This document shows, in pieces, positions 29,142-63,468 of a stretch of DNA of 64,000 bases. Below the pieces are notes generated by a model, which did no database searches, was not told the origin of the DNA, and saw only the letters and a program-made list of their open reading frames with translations. How positions within the stretch are numbered: the first letter of the stretch is position 1; the number at the start of each line of letters is the position of its first letter. Made by a program: the position numbers and the translations under genes. The stretch comes from Paragordius varius (taxonomy: Eukaryota; Animalia; Nematomorpha), in contig OZ176054.1 in the NCBI GenBank assembly GCA_964247055.1, positions 2,418,001 through 2,482,000 of the forward strand, in the 5' to 3' direction.

Positions 29142-32100
29142 ATGGATTACTTTTCAATAAAAAAAGTTTTATTTGATAATAAAATTTATATATTGGGACA
29201 CAAATATACAGGTTTTTAATATTTTTATCGTTTAGATGAGACCCAAATATCGCATGAAATATTGAAAAAATATGTTTTTACATATAGGAAAGATTTTCCT
29301 GCAATCAGTAAATTTAATCTCATTTATGTTTTAGATAGTAGTCAACACCTAACCTCAGATGCAGGATGGGGTTGCATGTTACGCGCAGGTCAAATGATGT
29401 TAGCAGAAGCCCTAAGTCGTCATTTCGCTAATCATAGTATGCAAAAATCAAAACTTTCATATTTTTAGGGCATATCTTAGATTTATCGATAGATAGTTTT
29501 CATGCTATTAATACCCAATTGGATCAAAAGACCACGATTTCGTTACCCGATTGCCAAACAGGTGATTCATTACAATGGGCATCTCCCTTGCAAAAGAAAT
29601 TATCTCAAGTGTATGAGTCGGCGAAACGAACCCTTATAGAGTATTGGTATTCATCACCTCAAACAATGTCGGAAACGCTCAATAATTCATATTACAATTA
29701 CTGTAAAATGGATAGTTTTGAGGCACGAGAGGATATGTTTTTCAAAATTTTTACTCATTTATCCACAATTTATAGCAGCACAACAGCTGATCAAACAAAT
29801 ATTCGTCTGAAATTGCTTGAAATGTTTGCTGATGACTGTAATGCCTTGTTTTCTATCCATAACATTTCAACGACCTCCACAAATAAAGGCGGAACAGCTG
29901 AACAAACCAATTCACCAAAATCTACAGGATTATCTTGTGAATATTCGGTTCCCGGTAAATGGTTTGGACCAAATTCCGTTTCCCAAGCCATAAAGTTTTT
30001 TACTTTTTGTTTTTCAAAAATCACAATTTTTTGACTCTTAATTATTTTAGAATGAGTTAAAATATCAATTATTAAACTAATCGAAAATAATGTTTAAATA
30101 TGGATAATTAATTTGTCTGTTTTGATGTTAATAGGTTTCGTAAGCTAATGTCAAAATATAAATATCATATATGTGGTGAATATACATTTTAATTTATTTA
30201 ACCATTCTTTTGTATTTTTATAACTATTTAACATTTTTTTAGAGCAATCATTCAAAATGAACCCGAGTTATGGTTAAATTTTCACGTAGCAATGGATAAT
30301 GCAATTGTTTTATCCGTCATAAGTAATTATAATTACGAATTTACTAAATATGTTATTTTAATTAAGTTATTAATGTAATATTTATATAAAAAGCGTATTT
30401 TATATTAAAACAGTATCTTTATAATCATGTAAATATAAGCAAATTAAATTATAACAAAAAAAACTAATTATCTTTTGCATATATTAATTTTAAAACCTTT
30501 TTGAAATTCATTATGAAACTGAGATGAAATGATTTTTTTTTGAAAATAGTCATTGTTTAAATAAATATTATACATTGTTTCGTTTATATTGAAAGATATT
30601 TAATTATATATATTATTAATTGAAAAACTACAATTTAGGAAAATATTTTGAAACAAAAAGCACTGGACAAAATTTATTTGCACCTGAAAATTCTGTTGTT
30701 GAATCCACCATTTCAGTAGATACCGGTTTATCCAACAATCAATCGCAATCATCTGAACCATTAAATATTTCAACTCCATCTCAAAAATCATTAATTTTAG
30801 TTATACCGCTTCGATTGGGTTTAACCAACATAATTCCCGCTTATTTTGATGCATTAAAGGTATTTTTCTAGAAATATAAAAAAACTTTTTACTTAATTAC
30901 TGAGGACTAAAAGTTTCATAATATGTAAAAATATTCCACATAATAAAAAAATGGTTTATAATCTTACGTATAAAAATATATGAATTAATACAATAATCAA
31001 TATAAAGTCATATTGACACCTCCGCGTGGTAATGCGCTAAAGGTAGGGGCCAGTTTTTAATGATCTGTAAACTCATTAGTTGTACACAAGGGCATGTGTT
31101 ACGTAAAAAATCGTCTCAGATTACCACGAAGTATAAAAATTATGAATATGAATTTACTTACTAGTACCAAAACTCTGAATCAGGACTCCTACTCTTGATG
31201 ATCATAATATCGATTATAAATTAGTTTAAGCCTTATTTTAAATACATGATATGCGCTCGAAAATTACTTACAATATAAAATGTAATGTGTTTAAGGGTGG
31301 AATACAACCTTGTTAAAGCCATTCTTATTTTCATTTATTACAGTAAAAATTGATTATAAGACAATTATTTAAAACTAGAAGACAAATATTTTGTAGCAGA
31401 ATAAGGATTATATGGATGTAAATTGGAAACATAATTTATTATATAGTTTTAGATATTATGAGGTCACAATTGTATGACTCCCTTAAAAAATATTTTATCT
31501 TTTAGTTTTTGCGTTTATGATATGTTTTCTATTTTTAGGCCTTTTTCCAAATACCACAATGTTTGGGTATTCTTGGTGGTCAGCCTAAACATGCTCTTTG
31601 GTTTTTTGGGTATTCAGGTAAGATAATCCATAAAGATTTTTATATATATATTTGCTTTTTTTATTTTAAACCTTGTTTAAAAGTAAATTTGGAATGTTTT
31701 ATTCTGATTTTTGTATGTGGGAGACATTGCATACAGACAATTTCGCATCTGTATTTTAATTTTTTAATTATTCTTTAAGTTAAAATCCTCAAAACCGTGT
31801 TTTTTGGTTAAAATTATATTTTTATAAATGATTTTTTACATAATTTAGTTTTAATACGACTTTATTTGACAAAACTTTTAACCATTTAGATAATGATCTC
31901 ATATATTTTGATCCACACATTGTGCAAACAGCTGTTCCACTCACCGAATTAAAGAGCTTGACAAACAAGTTATCGAAAGCGCAATCGTTTTCTTACAAGG
32001 ATTTAGTTACTGAGGGTATGCAAAAAACGCTCAGTATTCTAAAATCATATCATTGTATAATCACACACAATGAGGAGAACCATATATCCGAAACGCCTAA

Positions 32101-36279: not shown

Positions 36280-38273
36280 CAAAAATGATCCAAATATACC
36301 AGCCCCAGTATACGATACCACAGAAGATTTATTTAGAAGATGCCAAAAATGTTATTGATGATCCCTATAATAGAACTTTATAAAAATGTCGTCGATCTTT
36401 ATCTTAAAATATAAACTGCCCCAAATCGCTGATGAAGGTTTGTTATTTCTTTTGCATGAATACTTCTTATCGAGCGGGCTTGTTATAAGACAAAGAAATA
36501 CACAATTCCAAAAAAGCGCTCGGGAAGACAAAAACGATCACTACAATCAGCTGTGCTTAAAATTAGAAAACGCTGCTAAATATAACAACAACTACTTTGC
36601 TGAAGTAGATCCCATTGCTCCACGCAGGTCTAAAAGCTACAAAGGCCCAATGAGAGAGGAAGATGGATATATCATCACAGACAAAAAAACACTGGTGGAA
36701 CAATGGGAACAATATGTATTAAAATTATACGGCTCCAGTCCATCGAACGCCGATAAAAACAGTAATATCTATCAACATGACCCGCCAATCAGAAGAAGTT
36801 GAATGGGCGCTCAACCATTCCCCAAACAACAAATCTGAGGGGTACAACGATATTCCGACCGAACTCATTCGTTTTATCCCAATTCATATCCTAACTGACT
36901 TATTCCAAAAGATATTTGCTCACGCCTCATTCTCCCAAGATTGGTGCAAATCAATACTCATCCCCATCTTTAAAAAGGCGATCCTAAATTATTTAACAAC
37001 TATAGAACTATAGCGCTAATCAATTAAGCATCAAAAGTTTTTCTCAAAATAATTCACAGGCGTATCCAAGGCATAATTGAAGCCGAACTTTCTAATACCC
37101 AAGCGGAATCTAGAACCAATCGCGGATGCAGGGACATGATCAGCAATATACGTTGGATATTCAAAAAACAAATTAATTTCAGAAAGACCCACATCTGCTT
37201 CATTGAGTTTTCAAAGGCCTTCGACAGCGTGAAGCACGACACGCTGTGGAAGGCTCTATCTCAGATGGGAGTTTCAGATCACATATTAAACGTCATCAAA
37301 TCCCTTTACTCCAATTCATCACTAACCATAAAAACCCCACACGACACGAGTAATTGGATACGAATGAACAATGGTTTACGACAAGGATGCGTCCTTTCAC
37401 CGACTCTTTTTAACGTCTGCATAGAAAGCGTATTAAGAAACATATATAAAGCTAATGACATAAGCATCGCCGGCAATATTATATCATCACTTCACTATGC
37501 TGATGATACTATATTGCTGTAAAATTCAGTGGACAACCTAAAAAAACTCTTAACTGAATTCTCAAATGAATGTCAAAAATTTGGATTGACGATCAACTAC
37601 AAAAAACTAAAATCATGATTATAAACGCTCATAACCACTATAACAACTTATCTTTTCACAACCAACAAATAGAAGTAGTGTCCCAATACACTTACATAGG
37701 CAGTCTTATAAATACGACTAACAACAGCACCCCTGACATCAGAAGAAGAATAGGAATTGCTAAGACAAAAATGATAAAATATAATAAACTATGGTCATCA
37801 TATGACATCAAACTTAAAACAAAAATCCGTTTAGTTAAATCCCAATATTTCCTAGCATGCTATACGCATCAGAAAGCTGGACAATAAAAACGGTAGACGA
37901 AAAATACATTAACGCCTTTGAAATCTGGTGCTGGCGGAAGATACTTCGAATCACTTGGAAAGACAAAATAAAGAACACTGTAATCCTTGACAAAATAAAC
38001 CCCGAGATACACCTGATTGGCATGTGCCTCATGAAATTATCATACTTTGATCTCATTACCAGAACTAACGACTTGGAATTCCAACTAATGACAGGCAAGG
38101 TCGAAGGATCCAGGAAACGTGGACGCTACAAGATGCGCTGGATCGAAAACCTAACCAAAGAAACCAATCTCTCTTTACAACAGCTAACATCATCACTTAC
38201 CATCGAATAAACTGGAGAAAATACACCTTCGAAAAGCAATAAATCGACAACGATCTTTGCTATAATAATAATA
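36280..38273 (+). mobile_element. RTE-clade non-LTR retrotransposon, 5'-truncated and frameshifted
   Basis: Endonuclease remnant (MIQIY..P...YLEDAKNVIDD, ~36285), RT motifs NNKSEGYNDIPTELI, FIEFSKAFDSV, GLRQGCVLSPTLFN, LHYADD, YTYIGS, C-terminal GKVEGSRKRGRYKMRW, and a (TAA)n tail at ~38262-38273. Split over ORFs 36386, 36777, 37136, 37570 and 37857. Confidence 0.9.
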
Positions 38274-40150: not shown

Positions 40151-43100
40151 ATGGATCTTAAACCTGCCGGTGTTGAAAAACTTTGGACAAAGCTGCAAAT
40201 ACGTTTGGAGGATAAAAATTTTTATGAAGCACATCAACTTTATAAAATTATATATTTTCGGCTTTTGAATCAACATAAATATCAAGATGCGTTTGATGTT
40301 TTAATAAACGGATCCTTAAAACTGATTACTAATAACCAAGTATTAATTATACCAATAAAAGGTTCCAAGTGGATATGAATTGGTTACGATTTATTTAGAA
40401 GATGGGGTAAAGAAACATAAAATTAGCACAGATCATATCAAATTAGGTTTATTTTATGAGTGAATTTAGATATGCTCATTGATATATTTCGTCTTTTGCC
40501 ACCAAATTCTCACGAAAGAACTCAATATCAATGCAATATCTTAGACATTTTTCAAAATTGCAATGAATTTTCTTCCACAACAGCGCAAACATTTTTAAAC
40601 AAAATTCACACCGAATTCGCTAAAATTTTATGGAAAGGTTTTAGTATTTAATTAAATTTAGTGATTATTATACTATTGATGCATAAATTGTTAAAATATA
40701 TCATAATGTTTCTTTTATTTTCAATAAAAAGGGTACTTAAATACTTTAGGGCCAGTTTGACCCTTAATCTATATATTTATTAATTAAATAATTATTTAAA
40801 TTAAATCACATCTGGTTGAATAAATTAGGGTTTTGATTCAAATCGGCTCTAACAAATTGATGTTTTAAATTTGATCGACTTGATGTTTTTAAAAGTTCGC
40901 TAATATTGCAGAAACACAATTTCTCAATTTTGCCTTCTATTATAGCATGGTTTTATTCCCTAAAATAAACACCTTAAACGCGAATTAATCGAATCAAAAT
41001 GTGAATCAATCTGTTTTATTTGTCGTGCATCAATAAACTTACATGACATATTGCATTAGTATTAAAAATTAAATACATCATGATTTATGAATTCAGAATA
41101 AAATTTAATCATACTTGAATTAACCTAAAACATCCTTTAATTTGTGTCAATAAGGGCCTTACATAAATTATTTGTTTTTTTGATACACATACCATTTATC
41201 ATATATTGATTAATCGTTATTTGGCCTAAAATATTTAAATTCCAGTCTATGACTTATGCGTTTGCCTTAAACATATTTTTTGTTTATATTTTTATTTTAT
41301 ATTGTGATTCTAGAAAAAGATTTTTCACAATCCCGGTACCATTTTATACGCTGTAGTGATGGGCTCTCATGTGCAACAATGTTAGTTGAGTATGCAACAT
41401 TGAAAGGTTACCCGTCCGAAACTGATTTATTTATAGCTCAAGCTGTTTTACAGTAATTATATTTTGGCAAAAAACCCAATACTTTTTTTGATTTTGCTTT
41501 AAATTTAAAGCATATATACATGCATATATATTTATATATATATATTTATATATATATATATATATATATATAATGACCGTATGATTCAGATGTACAAAGG
41601 AGTCATAGTTTTAGGGTATAATCATTTGAGGAATCCTTTTTAAAAATTTATTTTCGAGCTTGTCTCCATTTTATACCTATTATAAAGTGACTCAAATACA
41701 ATAAAACATTTAATTTAATCATTTAATATTTTATTTTCTAATATAATAGTAGAATTAAAGTTATACATTATTATTATTATTATTATTGGGTAAATTTGAA
41801 AATTAATTTTGTTAAATTTGGTCGTGATGCGAGTTATAGAATTATAATAAATTGAAGGCTAAGAGCTAAAGTATTGAAAATTGAAAATGGGTAATATATG
41901 GTGCGGTGTAATAGATTCGGGCGGCTTGCATAAGCTCCGCATAAATTCCCAAGCAATCCTTTAATTATGCCAGATATGGCAAAGTTATACAATGAGAGAG
42001 GTACAAGTGATCCTATAATAGCCCATAACAGTATGGTAAGATATCCACTATCCAGTTAATAAAAGTGGCTGCCCAATATCCATCTAAAATTCAAAATATA
42101 CCTCATCCAATCATTTTAAAAAAAATAATATCAACTAGGTATAATTAACGGGGTTTTTTGTTAGAATCAACCGAAGAGAAAAACCCTATAAGTACTAAAA
42201 ATAACCTAAACTAACATAATAAATATAGCCTATCTGAAAGCCTAAGGTTTAAACCACAAGATGCCTCTTTTAGTATTTTTTAATATATATTTATACGTTT
42301 TTAAAATTAGCTTTAAAAAACCCAAATCTTAACGTTTATACCCGTACTATTTTTTTCATATTTAAATGACATATTAATATTCAAAAGATAGAGTTTAAAC
42401 GCTCTATATGACAGGGCTTATTAAACTATGGGTCGCGACCCCATTTGGGGTCGCGAATGATAAAAATACAATTAAACAAAAAATGCTTTTAAACTTGAAA
42501 AATTATTGTTATAAAGAAAAATAACAATCATCGTAGATAAATATATCATAAAATATTCTCTTTCGAAAATACTCTTATACCAGTATTTCTATTCCAATAT
42601 CTTGTATTACTATGAATCAGTAGATATTATTACTTCAAACGCTAAATTTGAAAGTTTTATTAAAAATCAGCATTTGGAGTAGGGTCGAAATATATTCGTT
42701 CGTATTGATTTACAAAAAATAGTTTGGATTTAAAAGCCGTTTTGGATTGGCTTAAGTGAGATTGATCATCCACTTAAAGCTCAAGGGGAATTTGCAGATC
42801 ATTCCTGTGACTCAAACTCTACAATTCCAAAAAAAACCCTTGACTGAGTTCTGGATCGGAACTATAACTGAATTTCCTACAATCGCCGATATGGCGTTAA
42901 TTGTACTTCTGCCATTCAATACCATATATTTATGCAAAGTTACTTTCTCAGCTTTAAGACATATTAAATCCCAATATCGTTCAGCGATAAAAAATGTTGA
43001 AGAGGTCTTACGTCCATCAATTTTAAACATTGCAACAATATTTGATTTGTTATGCAATAAAAAACAGGCACATCCATCTCATTAAATTTTTAACGTAAAC

Positions 43101-45155
43101 TTTAATTTAATATTTACCACGCAACTACATATTCGAGAGAATTAAGATTGTCAGAATCCTGTTTTTGAAACTATAATAAAAACTTTTCTTTAACATTTTG
43201 TGCAAATTTCAATTTTTGATTTTTAGTTTTCAAAACGAATTCTAAATTTATATTATTTTCATATGCATATGTATATTGGTACCTAATAAATATATCATTA
43301 AAAAATATTAAATATTTCTTTTATATTTATTGGGGTCATTAAGAAACTCGCAATTATAATCGCAAATTAAAAAAGTTTAAGAAGCCCTGCTCTATGATAT
43401 TAATTTTATATTTTTAAAGTTATATTTGATTTTCTGTCTATTTTCTCTTGTTTTTGAAAAATTGAAAAACCTTTAATATCTCAAAATTCTAAGGAGGGGG
43501 AATCAAATTTTTTTTCACGGTTTTAGAAAACTGAAATTAGTCAAAATTTAAAATTTTGAGTGGTGGTGCTCGAAAAAATCCAAATTTGTCGACTATTATG
43601 CAATTAGTTGTTTTATTGGTTTATTTATCTTTTTTTCAAATTTTAGTTGTACATCTTATATGATAAGTTATAATATAATATAGCTTTAATACTTTTTTAT
43701 AACTTATATTTTTTAATTTGAACATTTTACTCAATTTCGTTTACCAAAATTATTTTATAATAATTTTTTAATAGATATCTTTGCCTAAAAAACAAGGATA
43801 CAGCTCACCATGCCTTTTATGCCTACGTTAAACTCCATCCTGTAATTCATCGAGAAAAACCACCTTTTCCCTTCCCCCTCCTAAATTTCTTGTGCTTTCT
43901 GTTGGCTGCCATACAAAGGTAATTTTATCAAAAAAATTTTGATATAATTTTAGATTTTGGCATATTGAATAATAGATTTGATTAAAAATTAGATGAATAA
44001 TACTTTTAGATGCCGGTTTTTTTACAAATATATAGAGTAATTATTATAAATTAATTTTTTTAAAAAAATATTTTACCTTTTACATAATCTAATTTTGGGT
44101 TTTAATAACATATGAAATTAAAGTTTAAATTTTTTGATAATGCATATTTAAATTTTATCTGATATAACAGGAATTACAAATTAACCGTTTTCTCCATACT
44201 CTGTGATAAATATGAGCCTAGTTTGAGACGTGATCCGTCTTTTTTTACGGTAATTTTTTTATTTTAAATATATTTTATTATAAAGAATATTTTATTACAT
44301 TTTAATTTTTTGTGGTTATATTAACTAATCTAAATAAATAATTATTTAGACTCTATTATATGTATGTTTTAGTATTTGGATCGTATTGGGCAAATATTTT
44401 TTAATTTACCCCCCAAGCCTACATCAACCGGTCTATTTGGTACGCATTTGTTAAATTTCATAAAATACTTTTTAATGTTTTTAAAATATCTTTACATTTC
44501 ATATTTAATTAATTTTTATATTTCATTTACACCAAATCCTTGAACATTCACTCTAAAATTAATTATGTGTAATGGAATATTAAAAATTACCACCTATATA
44601 TATTTGTAAAGAATGAAATTTCATTTATGATTAACTAACATAAACTGAAAAAATAATAAACTATGCCGTAAAGAAATTTTTTATATCCATGATTAATTAT
44701 ATTAGCCTGAAAACACTTAATTTATTATTAAGGTGAATGTGAATTGTTTAAGGGTAATTTGAATTGTACGAGGGTGAATTTGAAATGTAAATGGTATAAT
44801 TCTTTATATTATTATAGATAATTTTTTCTCAAATCTCATGACCAACTTCCAAAGCATTGTTGGGGAACCGCTTGAAACAGATAATAATAATAGCCATCAT
44901 ACTGTAAAAAATAATGCATCAGAAAATGTAACCTTTAACCATTTTAATAATAATGCCACAGAAGAAATTGATTATAGTTATTGCAATAATTTTAGTGATA
45001 AAAATTATAACAATACAAATTTTGATAATTTTAACACAAAATCTACGCCCTATTTCACCAAAGAAACGATCGAAACAAACGAAGGCACAGGAACGAATGT
45101 TGGCAAATTTAAAAGCAAAACTAAACTGGAATTAAGAGAGGACGATTTAGATTGA
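40151..45155 (+). CDS. GET4: Golgi to ER traffic protein 4 (GET4/TRC35), ~402 aa, 8 exons
   Basis: Exons 40151-40339, 40362-40446, 40470-40637, 41314-41452, 43775-43918, 44171-44249, 44373-44439, 44818-45155 (1209 nt). Motifs KNFYEAHQLYK, PPNSHER, SRYHF, GYPSETDLFIAQAVLQYLCLKN, PLLNFL, LCDKYEPSLRRDP, YLDRIGQIFF, C-terminal EDDLD*. Confidence 0.95.
40340..40361 (+). other. 22-nt micro-intron (GET4 intron 1), shortest in the window
   Basis: GTATTAATTATACCAATAAAAG. Retention frameshifts to TGA at 40376-40378; removal gives LITNNQ|VPSGYELVTIYLE, matching GET4 FFSHGQQNSAADLSMLVLE. Confidence 0.85.
40447..40469 (+). other. 23-nt micro-intron (GET4 intron 2)
   Basis: GTTTATTTTATGAGTGAATTTAG, in-frame TGA. 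Removal gives DHIKL-D-MLIDIFRLLPPNSHER, matching [21 protein letters not shown]. Confidence 0.88.
41880..43596. repeat. Family X repeat in GET4 intron 4, interrupted by a hAT element
   Basis: Flanks 41880-42000 and 43440-43596 match 38380-38712; left boundary approximate. Confidence 0.6.
42412..43389 (+). mobile_element. Internally deleted hAT (Charlie/Buster-like) transposon, 978 bp, keeping the transposase C-terminal dimerization region
   Basis: 16-bp TIRs CAGGGCTTATTAAACT / AGTTTAAGAAGCCCTG (15/16), 8-bp TSD CTATATGA / CTCTATGA (7/8). ORF 42756-43085 has LTEFWIGTITEFPTIADMALIVLLPFNTIYLCKVTFSAL...KQAHPSH. Confidence 0.9.
44519..44796. mobile_element. MITE with ~20-bp subterminal tandem repeats (family C, copy 1) in GET4 intron 7
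   Basis: Right end AGGGTAATTTGAATTGTACGAGGGTGAATTTGAAATGTAAATGGTA; the left end is a degenerate inverse. Confidence 0.7.
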
Positions 45156-51054: not shown

Positions 51055-53494
51055 ATGGTTGACAAGTTAGGTGTGTTTTCGATATTTTTTAAATTTTAAT
51101 TATATAAAAAATCTAATTTTTATTTTTGGTTAGCCAACACTGAAGCAAACACAAGACGGATTCAATTCGTTGAAAGCTGTTTTGGCACATCAGGCCAACC
51201 ATTACTTATTCCAGGTAGAGTTTTGGTGGGGGAAGGTGTGTTGACAAAAATATGTCGTAAGAAACCAAAACCTCGACAATTCTTTCTTTTCAACGATATT
51301 CTCGTTTATGGCAATATTGTTATCAATAAGAAAAAGGTATAATTCTATATAATATATTTAGTATAATAAGCAACATATCATTCCCCTTGAAGAAGTTAAA
51401 ATAAAAAGTTTACCAGATGAGGGTAGCCTGAAGAATGGATGGTTAATTTCAAGTCGAACCAAATCTTTTGCGGTATATGCTGCTACTGGAACGGAAAAAT
51501 CGGAATGGATCGCGCACATAAATAAATGTATTGGTGACTTATTGGCCAAAAGTAAAATCAATTATATATATATCCCCCAAAATTGAATTTTGTATCATAA
51601 AACATATAAATACATCATATTTAAATAAAAAATTTTTAAATAACCTGTGATTATAAATAATTTTTTATAACTAGTTTATGAATTATCCAACACAATGAGC
51701 TCAAATAATCAAATTAAATTTCCAATTATTAAACTTAAAAATCAAATATCCATCGAATAATATTTATTATTACCATTCCAAATAATTTTCAGATAAATTA
51801 AATTCATTTTAAAAATCTGTAGGTCGGATTTTACCAGTTATTAACGCATTTATGCTCGTGATTAACCGTGACTAAAATGAGAAGATAATTATGGTTTTTA
51901 AATAAATTAATTGAAAATACTTTTTAAAATTGTTTTTGTTATTACCATATTATATAAACTATTGAAATCGATTTGAACCGTTACATAGCATTTATTATAT
52001 TTTTGACAATATAAAAATCCAACACCTAGTTATAAAGTAATAATTAGTCTATATATTTTCTTTATTATTGGGTTCATTTTATAAACCTCATCATTATCTT
52101 TTTTTTATTTTTATGTAAGAATTTGGTTTTAATTAAATTATTAAATTTTAGCTGGGAAAACTGCCGCATCTGAACATGCTGCTCCTTGGGTTCCTGACTC
52201 AGAAGCTTCCATATGCATGCATTGCAAAAAGGCTCAATTTACGCTTATAAACAGAAGGGTACGCTATTTTGGTTTTCGCTTCAAAGATTTTTAAAAATGA
52301 ATTTTAAATATGTACTTTGTAAACATTTTTTTTCCTTTGAGTTAAAGAAGGTGAGACTAATTAATTTATTATATATACCATTACAGTTCAAATTTATTCT
52401 TGAACAATTTAAATTCACCCTTGAACAATTCAAATACACCCTAAAAAACAATTATGTGTTTTCCTAATATAACTCATTATTAATATGAAATATATCTTTA
52501 TGGCATAGTTTATTGAGGGTGCATTTGAATTGTTTAAAGGTGAATTTAAATTGTATAAGGGTGACTTTGAATTGTTCAAGGGTGAGTTTGAATTAAATGG
52601 TATTATAAAGCTTAAATAGATATTTGTTTTATGACGCATATTTATAAACAATATATTTGATGGGTTTGTTAATGCGAACGGTCCTTATCGTTTTGTGGAA
52701 AAACGTCATTGTACGATTATATCGAAAATTTTTAACATATAAATTAAATTTTATAAAAATTTAAATACTGAAACTTTTTGAAAAAATGCCTAATTTTTTA
52801 GTTTATATTTTTAATGATATTCATGAAATATACCTATTAGATTCATTATAAATCAATAATATATAAGTATTAGACAGGAGTGTGAATTATTTAATTGAAG
52901 TTTTCCCATAACGGATTTTATATTTAAATAGGCTTAGATGAAATTTTTCAAGAGAAACTTATTTTTTAACCTGAATTATTACTTGTTTTGGGTTGCGAAA
53001 TAGGAGTTGATGTGTTAGCGCATTCAAATATATATTTTACAATTGTTATCATTGAAGTTATTTATAAAATAATGGATAAATAATATGGGTTTTTCCGTTT
53101 TTATATTTTATAATAATCAAGGAAGCTACATTACGGAGAAAAAAATCAAAAGATTTCACTATTAACTTTTATATGCTAAATAGGAAAATGATTTCTTATA
53201 TGTGTATTTCTTATTAATTTTACCCCAAGTACCATAAAATTTAAATTATTCTCCTTCTAAATAGCACCATTGTAGAAACTGTGGTCTTGTGGTTTGTGGT
53301 GCGTGTGGAAGTAAAAAGTTTTTACTCCCACACCAATCATCTAAACCGTTACGAGTTTGCTTGACTTGTTATGATAAACTCATCAGCAGTAGTAGTGATT
53401 CGATGGGTGCTTCAACAAAATTTCATTCAAATAATAACGCAAATATTGGTGTTCCAGGAACTCAAAACTCTAACAATTTGAATGATGACTCAGG

Positions 53495-56157: not shown

Positions 56158-63468
<7,311 letters not shown>

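What the first reader, a model, noticed from the sequence alone, without database searches (positions are those of the whole stretch)
40340..40469. GET4 has tandem 22- and 23-nt introns flanking an 85-nt exon, apparently at ancestral positions
Seen: both are obligatory (frameshift and in-frame TGA) and restore exact register with GET4. From memory, human GET4 has introns at the matching sites (GQ|QNS phase 0; ELL-E-NL phase 1); this is recalled, not verified. If correct, these are old introns shrunk to near the physical minimum rather than new insertions, while later introns of the same gene are 123-2322 nt.
Basis: partly seen in the sequence, partly recalled or inferred. Interest (0 to 1): 0.75.

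Follow-up and report, generated by a model that had tools for sequence, protein, structure and literature searches.

The report
Two tiny ancestral introns in GET4
An ordinary housekeeping gene (GET4) of an AT-rich animal genome, whose closest relative in the databases is a horsehair worm, can be read only if two segments of 22 and 23 bases are cut out; these lie exactly where a bird and several invertebrates have normal introns of 86-959 bases, so they are almost certainly real, extremely shrunken introns, though I could not see the cutting in RNA.

Summary
Observation confirmed. GET4 (+ strand, 40151-45155) reads as an open 402-codon gene only with eight exons and seven GT-AG introns of 22, 23, 676, 2322, 252, 123 and 378 nt. 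The 22-nt (40340-40361, phase 0) and 23-nt (40447-40469, phase 1) introns flank an 85-nt exon. That exon matches residues 63-89 of the horsehair worm Gordionus GET4 (46% identity, 0 of 5000 shuffles as good).

Of 34 junction combinations that keep the frame open, the 22+23 model fits all five reference proteins best.

Interpretation supported, without human DNA. Genomic GET4 contigs from metagenomes show introns at the same codon and phase in a bird (416 and 959 nt) and in unidentified invertebrates. All seven introns match the bird in position and phase. These are old introns that shrank, not insertions.

Not shown: removal from RNA.

Published work (Mol Biol Evol, Sept 2026) reports animal introns under 30 nt only in myxobolid Myxozoa and Dicyema. 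The scan has already noted such tiny introns on many other windows of this genome; this is one more well-supported case.

The parts
40151..40339 (+). GET4 exon 1 (63 codons, starts at ATG)
   Evidence: Translation. A local GET4 profile matches positions 8-66, E 7e-18. 49% identical to Gordionus GET4, with a shared 14-residue run.
40340..40361 (+). Intron 1, 22 nt, GT..AG, phase 0
   Evidence: Same site and phase as introns of 416 nt (bird L035), 280 nt (L031), 190 nt (L045) and 86-88 nt (insect L021/L025).
40362..40446 (+). GET4 exon 2, 85 nt (28 codons plus 1 nt); encodes the conserved SG-x-(D/E)-L motif
   Evidence: The matching exon is 82 nt in L031, L035 and L042.
40447..40469 (+). Intron 2, 23 nt, GT..AG, phase 1 (splits a G|AT Asp codon); in-frame TGA if retained
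   Evidence: Same site and phase (G|GT, an E codon split) in bird L035 (959 nt), L031 (450), L042 (529) and L034 (255).
40470..40637 (+). GET4 exon 3 (168 nt, phase 1 to phase 1)
   Evidence: Profile positions 91-143, E 7e-6. A cassette exon in Tachypleus, Salvelinus and Ahaetulla isoforms.
40638..41313 (+). Intron 3, 676 nt, phase 1
   Evidence: Same site in L035, L031, L042 and L043.
41314..41452 (+). GET4 exon 4
   Evidence: Pfam PF04190 4e-8, 33.7 bits against a cut-off of 30. Own-genome search gives 35.2 bits. Profile E 8.5e-23.
41453..43774 (+). Intron 4, 2322 nt, phase 2
   Evidence: Same site in L031, L042, L025, L022 and L041 and in bird L035.
43775..43918 (+). GET4 exon 5
   Evidence: E 2.6e-16.
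43919..44170 (+). Intron 5, 252 nt, phase 2
44171..44249 (+). GET4 exon 6
   Evidence: E 1.3e-7. 81% identical to Gordionus.
44250..44372 (+). Intron 6, 123 nt, phase 0
44373..44439 (+). GET4 exon 7
   Evidence: E 5e-6.
44440..44817 (+). Intron 7, 378 nt, phase 1
44818..45155 (+). GET4 exon 8 with an Asn-rich insert, the conserved C-terminal ..EDDLD and a TGA stop

Best explanation
The two segments are genuine U2-type (GT-AG) spliceosomal introns of the single-copy GET4 gene. They were inherited from the bilaterian ancestor and shrank in this lineage to 22 and 23 nt. The five downstream introns of the same pre-mRNA kept ordinary to large sizes (123-2322 nt).

Shown here:
- The gene is intact only with both introns removed.
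- Exon 2 is coding in the shifted frame.
- Site and phase are identical to introns of other animals.
- A canonical U2 snRNA is present in the genome.

Inferred:
- Both introns are removed by the major spliceosome through intron definition.
- The branch-point A lies only about 15-17 nt from the 5' splice site and 5-6 nt from the AG. Candidate motifs are CCAAT in intron 1 and GTGAAT in intron 2.
- Neither intron length is a multiple of three and each brings a premature stop, so an unspliced message would be untranslatable and probably degraded.
For: - Gene model: an open 402-codon frame with seven GT-AG introns.
- Junction choice: the 22+23 pair is the best of 34 frame-preserving solutions for all five references.
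- Exon 2 against Gordionus GET4 residues 63-89: 46% identity, E 6e-7, 0 of 5000 shuffles as good. A GET4 profile places exon 2 at positions 62-88, between exon 1 (8-66) and exon 3 (91-143).
- Orthologous introns at nucleotide level. The codon pair CAA/CAG|GT ... AG|next codon is phase 0 in the window, bird L035, L031, L045, L021 and L025. G|GT ... AG plus two bases, making an E or D codon, is phase 1 in the window, L035, L031, L042 and L034.
- All seven intron sites and phases are shared with the bird and with L031.
- Isoforms skip the exon 3 equivalent exactly at these columns in three species.
- GET4 is single-copy in the 110.6-Mb genome.
- The U2 snRNA has the canonical GUAGUA branch-point-pairing box.
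- The same window holds other short GT-AG gaps of 25-32 nt in PH-domain, ATG4 and amylase-like genes.
Against: - No RNA evidence.
- No spliced retrocopy of GET4 is in the genome.
- Exon 2 alone scores only 2.8 bits against a general metazoan GET4 profile. Its support rests mainly on the Gordionus sequence and on the SG-x-(D/E)-L motif.
- Intron 1 has no pyrimidine tract; it ends AAAAG.
- Branch points are guessed, not mapped.
- A homology-free scan for ORF-joining tiny GT-AG gaps in the window found no more than control dinucleotides did (24 against 19-36). Genome-wide prevalence was therefore not shown by me.
Confidence: 0.8

Rival explanations
1. The introns are real but are spliced inefficiently or in a regulated way. 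A sizeable share of transcripts would keep one of them, meet a premature stop and be degraded, so the tiny introns would act as an expression throttle.
For: Retaining either intron gives an early stop. Very short introns of Microsporidia are reported to be spliced at about 25% efficiency (cited in PMC13644364). Splice-site motifs are weak: GTATTA and GTTTAT at the 5' ends, and AAAAG at the 3' end of intron 1.
Against: GET4 is a single-copy housekeeping gene with a fully conserved exon 2 frame. No data on splicing efficiency exist.
Confidence: 0.12
2. There is only one intron of 99-108 nt (40362 to 40460 or 40469). Exon 1 would read on through the 22-nt segment and 'exon 2' would be non-coding.
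For: These are 2 of the 3 single-intron solutions that keep the frame open.
Against: They score 285 and 271 against 369 for the two-intron model with Gordionus, and lower with most of the other references too. They delete the conserved SG-x-(D/E)-L segment, which is present in frame in exon 2. Their donor is not at any intron site seen in other animals.
Confidence: 0.03
3. The gene is decaying. The 22- and 23-nt segments would be frameshifting insertions in a pseudogene, or assembly errors.
For: Read as plain sequence, both segments break the frame.
Against: Both segments start with GT and end with AG, at the exact codon and phase of introns in a bird and in invertebrates. The other 1209 coding bases are intact, with a conserved C-terminal motif. 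GET4 is the only copy in the genome.
Confidence: 0.03
4. The segments are removed at the DNA level, as ciliate internal eliminated sequences are, or are bypassed by the ribosome rather than spliced.
For: None found here. It is considered only because no RNA was seen.
Against: The GT-AG ends and the identity with spliceosomal intron sites of other animals argue for splicing. The genome has conventional U2 snRNA genes.
Confidence: 0.01

Closest known systems
Ultra-short introns of myxobolid Myxozoa (Henneguya salminicola, median 27 bp; Thelohanellus kitauei and Myxobolus rasmusseni, median 22 bp) and of Dicyema japonicum (PMC13644364)
   Same: These are animal GT-AG introns under 30 nt at conserved positions between conserved exons. 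Splice-site motifs are reduced, and A residues lie shortly before the AG (intron 1 here ends AAAAG). A conventional U2 snRNA is present.
   Different: The lineage differs: the nearest relative is a nematomorph, an ecdysozoan that the main text of that paper does not mention. Here 22-23-nt introns sit in the same gene as introns of 676 and 2322 nt, in a repeat-rich 110-Mb genome. Splicing was confirmed with long-read RNA in Henneguya but not here.
Tiny introns of ciliates (Paramecium about 20-34 nt, Stentor 15-16 nt) and of the Bigelowiella nucleomorph (18-21 nt)
   Same: The size class is the same, the ends are GT-AG and retention gives premature stops. The sizes for Stentor come from PMC13644364; those for Paramecium and Bigelowiella are from my own knowledge.
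   Different: In those genomes nearly all introns are tiny. Here only the first two of seven are. Those organisms are not animals.
GET4 / TRC35 (Pfam PF04190), a subunit of the tail-anchored protein targeting complex
   Same: Exon 4 passes the Pfam cut-off (33.7 against 30 bits). Six exons match a GET4 profile in order. The gene is colinear with Gordionus, arthropod and vertebrate GET4.
   Different: The protein is 402 residues against about 320, because of an Asn-rich insert in the last exon. Its function was not tested.

Membership tests
U2-type GT-AG spliceosomal intron | GT at the 5' end and AG at the 3' end | tested here: met
   Both segments: GTATTAAT...AAAAG and GTTTATTT...ATTTAG.
U2-type GT-AG spliceosomal intron | Removal restores an open frame colinear with orthologues | tested here: met
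   Open 402 codons. Best of 34 junction solutions. Exon 2 matches Gordionus residues 63-89.
U2-type GT-AG spliceosomal intron | Orthologous introns at the same site and phase in other species | tested here: met
   Bird L035, invertebrates L031, L042, L045 and L034, and insect L021/L025 for intron 1.
U2-type GT-AG spliceosomal intron | Branch-point adenosine and pyrimidine tract upstream of the AG | tested here: inconclusive
   Candidate A residues lie 5-6 nt before the AG (CCAAT, GTGAAT). Intron 2 has a short TTT before the AG and intron 1 has none. Nothing was mapped.
U2-type GT-AG spliceosomal intron | Excision from pre-mRNA seen in cDNA or RNA-seq | not testable with these tools
No spliced retrocopy.
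U2-type GT-AG spliceosomal intron | Major-spliceosome snRNA present in the genome | tested here: met
   U2 (RF00004): 46 matches, best 177.7 bits, with the GUAGUA box at position 34.
U12-type (minor) intron | Extended 5' consensus (A/G)TATCCTT | tested here: not met
   The 5' ends are GTATTAAT and GTTTATTT. The consensus is from my own knowledge.
Animal ultra-short (<30 nt) intron class (Myxobolidae, Dicyema) | Length under 30 nt at a conserved intron position | tested here: met
   22 and 23 nt. Positions conserved.
Animal ultra-short (<30 nt) intron class (Myxobolidae, Dicyema) | Prevalent across the genome (median intron length under 30 nt) | tested here: inconclusive
   In this gene only 2 of 7 introns are tiny. 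The window has four more gaps of 25-32 nt. A homology-free scan was no better than controls.
GET4 (PF04190) | Pfam score above the gathering cut-off | tested here: met
   33.7 bits against 30 on exon 4 alone. 36.1 and 35.2 bits in the own-genome search.

The most novel reading that the evidence does not exclude
This nematomorph-like animal would be a third, independent animal lineage with spliceosomal introns under 30 nt. It would differ in kind from the two published ones because the shrinkage is selective. In a single pre-mRNA the two 5'-most ancestral introns are 22-23 nt while downstream ancestral introns stay at up to 2.3 kb. One spliceosome would then handle a 100-fold length range, and some position-dependent force would drive introns near the start of the gene to a floor of about 21-23 nt.
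Probability: 0.6. Interest if true: 0.75.

Novelty: new member of a known kind. Interest (0 to 1): 0.6.

Why it matters
Introns under about 30 nt were long thought impossible in animals. The one comparative study I found (Mol Biol Evol, Sept 2026) reports them in only two parasite groups. GET4 gives an unusually clean test case in a third lineage. All seven intron sites are ancestral, so the length change can be read directly (22 nt against 86-416 nt, and 23 nt against 255-959 nt). The tiny and the kilobase-sized introns share one transcript. That makes two questions directly testable by RT-PCR, lariat mapping and minigene assays: what is the minimum distance between the 5' splice site and the branch point for an animal spliceosome, and why do only some introns shrink? 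It also has a practical side. Gene finders with a minimum intron length of 30-40 nt would mis-annotate this gene, and many others in this genome, as broken.

Tried and rejected
Intron sizes in the nearest relative are therefore unknown.
2. A word search with the Gordionus protein found no GET4 of the window's species among proteins of 152-485 residues. The 75-residue exon 1 ORF found no candidate at all.
3. Spliced-junction patterns for exons 1/2 and 2/3, with up to 2 mismatches, are absent from the whole genome, so there is no processed retrocopy.
4. Pfam on exons 1-3 alone gave nothing because they are too short. Exon 2 scores only 2.8 bits against a general GET4 profile.
5. A homology-free scan for tiny GT-AG gaps that join long open frames gave 24 hits against 19-36 for control dinucleotides. 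It is not specific and was rejected as evidence.
6. Paper searches for intron reports in Nematomorpha found none.
7. The single-intron, pseudogene and assembly-error readings were rejected (see rival explanations).
8. The spliced (joined) protein was never sent to a database or remote tool. Exons were joined only inside local scripts, to count stops and to score alternative junctions. No joined sequence was printed or saved.
9. No contig that I took for human was seen or used. The vertebrate contig used (L035) is avian.

Full report
**What is there**

The window is very AT-rich (about 26% G+C). It lies at contig 5, 2,418,001-2,482,000, of a 110.6-Mb assembly in 44 contigs. From the ATG at 40151 the + strand encodes a GET4 homologue:
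- Exon 4 alone passes the Pfam PF04190 cut-off (33.7 against 30 bits).
- A whole-genome six-frame search finds this locus and no other.
- A profile built from 20 animal GET4 proteins hits six ORF pieces of the window in order. These are exon 1 at profile positions 8-66, exon 3 at 91-143, exon 4 at 144-190, exon 5 at 190-236, exon 6 at 238-261 and exon 7 at 263-294.

**Gene model**

The eight exons are 40151-40339, 40362-40446, 40470-40637, 41314-41452, 43775-43918, 44171-44249, 44373-44439 and 44818-45155. Together they give an open frame of 402 codons ending in TGA. All seven introns are GT-AG: 22, 23, 676, 2322, 252, 123 and 378 nt.

- Keeping the 22-nt segment shifts the frame, with a stop at codon 76.
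- Keeping the 23-nt segment brings an in-frame TGA at codon 97.
- Skipping the 85-nt exon gives a stop at codon 88.

**Is the 22+23 solution forced?**

I listed every GT/GC...AG combination around 40290-40540 that keeps the frame open from the ATG to the end of exon 3. There are 3 one-intron and 31 two-intron solutions. The proposed pair scores highest against each of five reference proteins: a hairworm, a spider, an annelid, a bird and an unnamed arthropod-like transcript. Against Gordionus it scores 369, compared with 285 for the best single-intron model.

The 28-residue exon 2 peptide is readable only if both tiny introns are removed. It aligns to Gordionus GET4 residues 63-89 with 46% identity (E 6e-7). 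That stretch lies directly after the part matched by exon 1 and before the part matched by exon 3. None of 5000 shuffles reached its score (66 against a mean of 23.5 and a maximum of 42).

Against a general animal profile exon 2 scores only 2.8 bits, though at the expected positions 62-88. Its support is therefore lineage-specific conservation plus the SG-x-(D/E)-L motif.

**Whose genome**

- The closest protein among 1.8 billion cluster representatives is GET4 of Gordionus sp. m RMFG-2023, a horsehair worm.
- Per-exon identity to it is 44-81%, against about 30-40% between Gordionus and other animals.
- Gordionus has 26.9% G+C (10.1101/2023.06.26.546503).
- Studied nematomorph genomes are 200-300 Mb (10.1101/2024.06.11.598342), and this assembly is 110.6 Mb.
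- I therefore call it a nematomorph or close relative, species unknown.

**Ancestral positions**

One scan of metagenome contigs with the GET4 alignment returned 63 loci. Many are intron-less transcript contigs, but more than a dozen are genomic.

L035 is avian: it is 95% identical to Todus and Mionectes GET4. L042 and L034 are closest to the annelid Capitella (53-60%). L031 and L045 are unidentified invertebrates. L021, L022 and L024-L027 resemble an unnamed arthropod-like GET4 most closely; I take them for insect DNA because their record names look like termite-gut samples.

Intron site 1 has the same layout everywhere it occurs: a Q codon, then GT...AG, then the codon before SG-x-D-L, in phase 0.

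| Source | Intron 1 length (nt) |
|---|---|
| window | 22 |
| L035 (bird) | 416 |
| L031 | 280 |
| L045 | 190 |
| L025 / L021 (insect) | 88 / 86 |
| L042 | acceptor at the same place; upstream exon not found |

Intron site 2 also has one layout...L codon, then G|GT...AG followed by two bases that complete a D or E codon, in phase 1.

| Source | Intron 2 length (nt) |
|---|---|
| window | 23 |
| L035 (bird) | 959 |
| L031 | 450 |
| L042 | 529 |
| L034 | 255 |

The exon between the two sites is 82 nt in L031, L035 and L042, and 85 nt here.

Not every animal has these introns:
- L036, L064, L049, L030 and L020 lack both.
- L034 lacks intron 1 and L045 lacks intron 2.
- The insect contigs have, instead of intron 2, a phase-2 intron 13 nt further downstream.

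A crude HSP-chaining script then showed that introns 3-7 of the window also share site and phase with L031 and the bird, and mostly with L042. For the bird the match is 7 of 7.

Independent hints come from annotated isoforms:
- Tachypleus X2, Salvelinus X2 and Ahaetulla X2 lack exactly the exon 3 equivalent.
- Two fish models diverge right after ..NQ with a valine (a GTN codon), as expected if an intron starts there.

Human DNA itself was neither needed nor used.

**Mechanism**

Shown here:
- GT-AG ends.
- Site and phase identical to spliceosomal introns of other animals.
- An intact gene only after removal of both segments.
- Conventional U2 snRNA genes with the GUAGUA box.

Inferred:
- Removal by the major spliceosome, with a branch-point A about 15-17 nt from the 5' end and 5-6 nt from the AG.
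- The 5' sites are weak (GTATTA, GTTTAT), like those of the long introns of the same gene (GTTTTA, GTAATT, GTACGC).
- Intron 1 ends in an A-run (AAAAG). This recalls the A residues just upstream of the AG described for myxobolid and Dicyema micro-introns (PMC13644364).
- Because either intron, if retained, gives a premature stop, mis-spliced messages would not yield protein.

**What is missing**

Direct RNA evidence is missing:
- No GET4 protein or transcript of this species is in the collections.
- No spliced retrocopy is in the genome.
- The spliced protein has no reference, so it was not searched as a whole. Exons were searched one by one, and the joined search step was left out.

**Context and novelty**

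PMC13644364 (Sept 2026) states that animal introns under 30 bp are known only from myxobolid Myxozoa and Dicyema japonicum. Its main text does not mention nematomorphs. Papers on hairworm genomes that I could read say nothing about introns.

Earlier notes of this scan report tiny introns in many other windows of this genome. I used them as leads only. In this window I saw four more short GT-AG gaps: 25 nt in a PH-domain gene, 27 and 32 nt in ATG4, and 30 nt in an amylase-like gene.

The GET4 case is thus a new, well-documented member of a known kind (ultra-short spliceosomal introns) in a lineage for which I found no publication. Its added feature is that 22-nt and 2.3-kb ancestral introns lie in the same gene.

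Noticed in passing
window 51337-51361 (+): A 25-nt GT..AG gap in phase 0 joins two open pieces of a PLEKHF/phafin-like PH-domain gene (..VINKKK | YNKQHIIPLEE..). Pfam PH matches the right-hand piece at 2.5e-4.
   Followed up: partly
window 29308-29334 and 29437-29468 (+): The ATG4 gene (Peptidase_C54, 1.4e-17 and 6e-8 on the flanking pieces) has GT..AG gaps of 27 and 32 nt around the catalytic-cysteine exon.
   Followed up: partly
window 62550-62579 (+): A 30-nt GT..AG gap in phase 0 lies in an alpha-amylase/maltase-like gene (PF00128 2.5e-10 on the left-hand piece). It is near the 3' part of the catalytic domain, so short introns here are not confined to gene starts.
   Followed up: partly
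window 36386-38210 (+): A remnant of a reverse-transcriptase (RVT_1, 1.3e-19) retroelement is split over several frames just upstream of GET4. The G+C content is locally higher (0.36).
   Followed up: no
G000 C3 0.25-0.53 Mb, C2 11.95-11.99 Mb, C5 12.73-12.79 Mb; L066: The genome has at least 46 U2 snRNA matches ranging from 178 down to 38 bits, many in clusters of diverged variants. The best copy has the canonical GUAGUA box. I did not examine whether the variants differ in that box.
   Followed up: partly
window 44818-45155 (+): The last GET4 exon carries an Asn-rich, low-complexity insert of about 80 residues before the conserved C-terminal ..EDDLD. This makes the protein 402 residues against about 320 in other animals.
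   Followed up: no
P0009 versus P0151 (Gordionus); P0158, P0161, P0164, P0168 (vertebrates): The 277-residue Gordionus GET4 model and several vertebrate isoforms of 278-290 residues all lack the 48-codon exon 5 equivalent. This symmetrical exon may be an old alternative cassette.
   Followed up: no
L031:1681-2062; L025:3787-3947: An extra phase-2 intron in the R codon of ..YF-R-Y.. occurs in an invertebrate contig and in the insect contigs. It is absent from the window and from the bird. The insect contigs also have a phase-2 intron 13 nt downstream of intron site 2 in place of that intron.
   Followed up: partly
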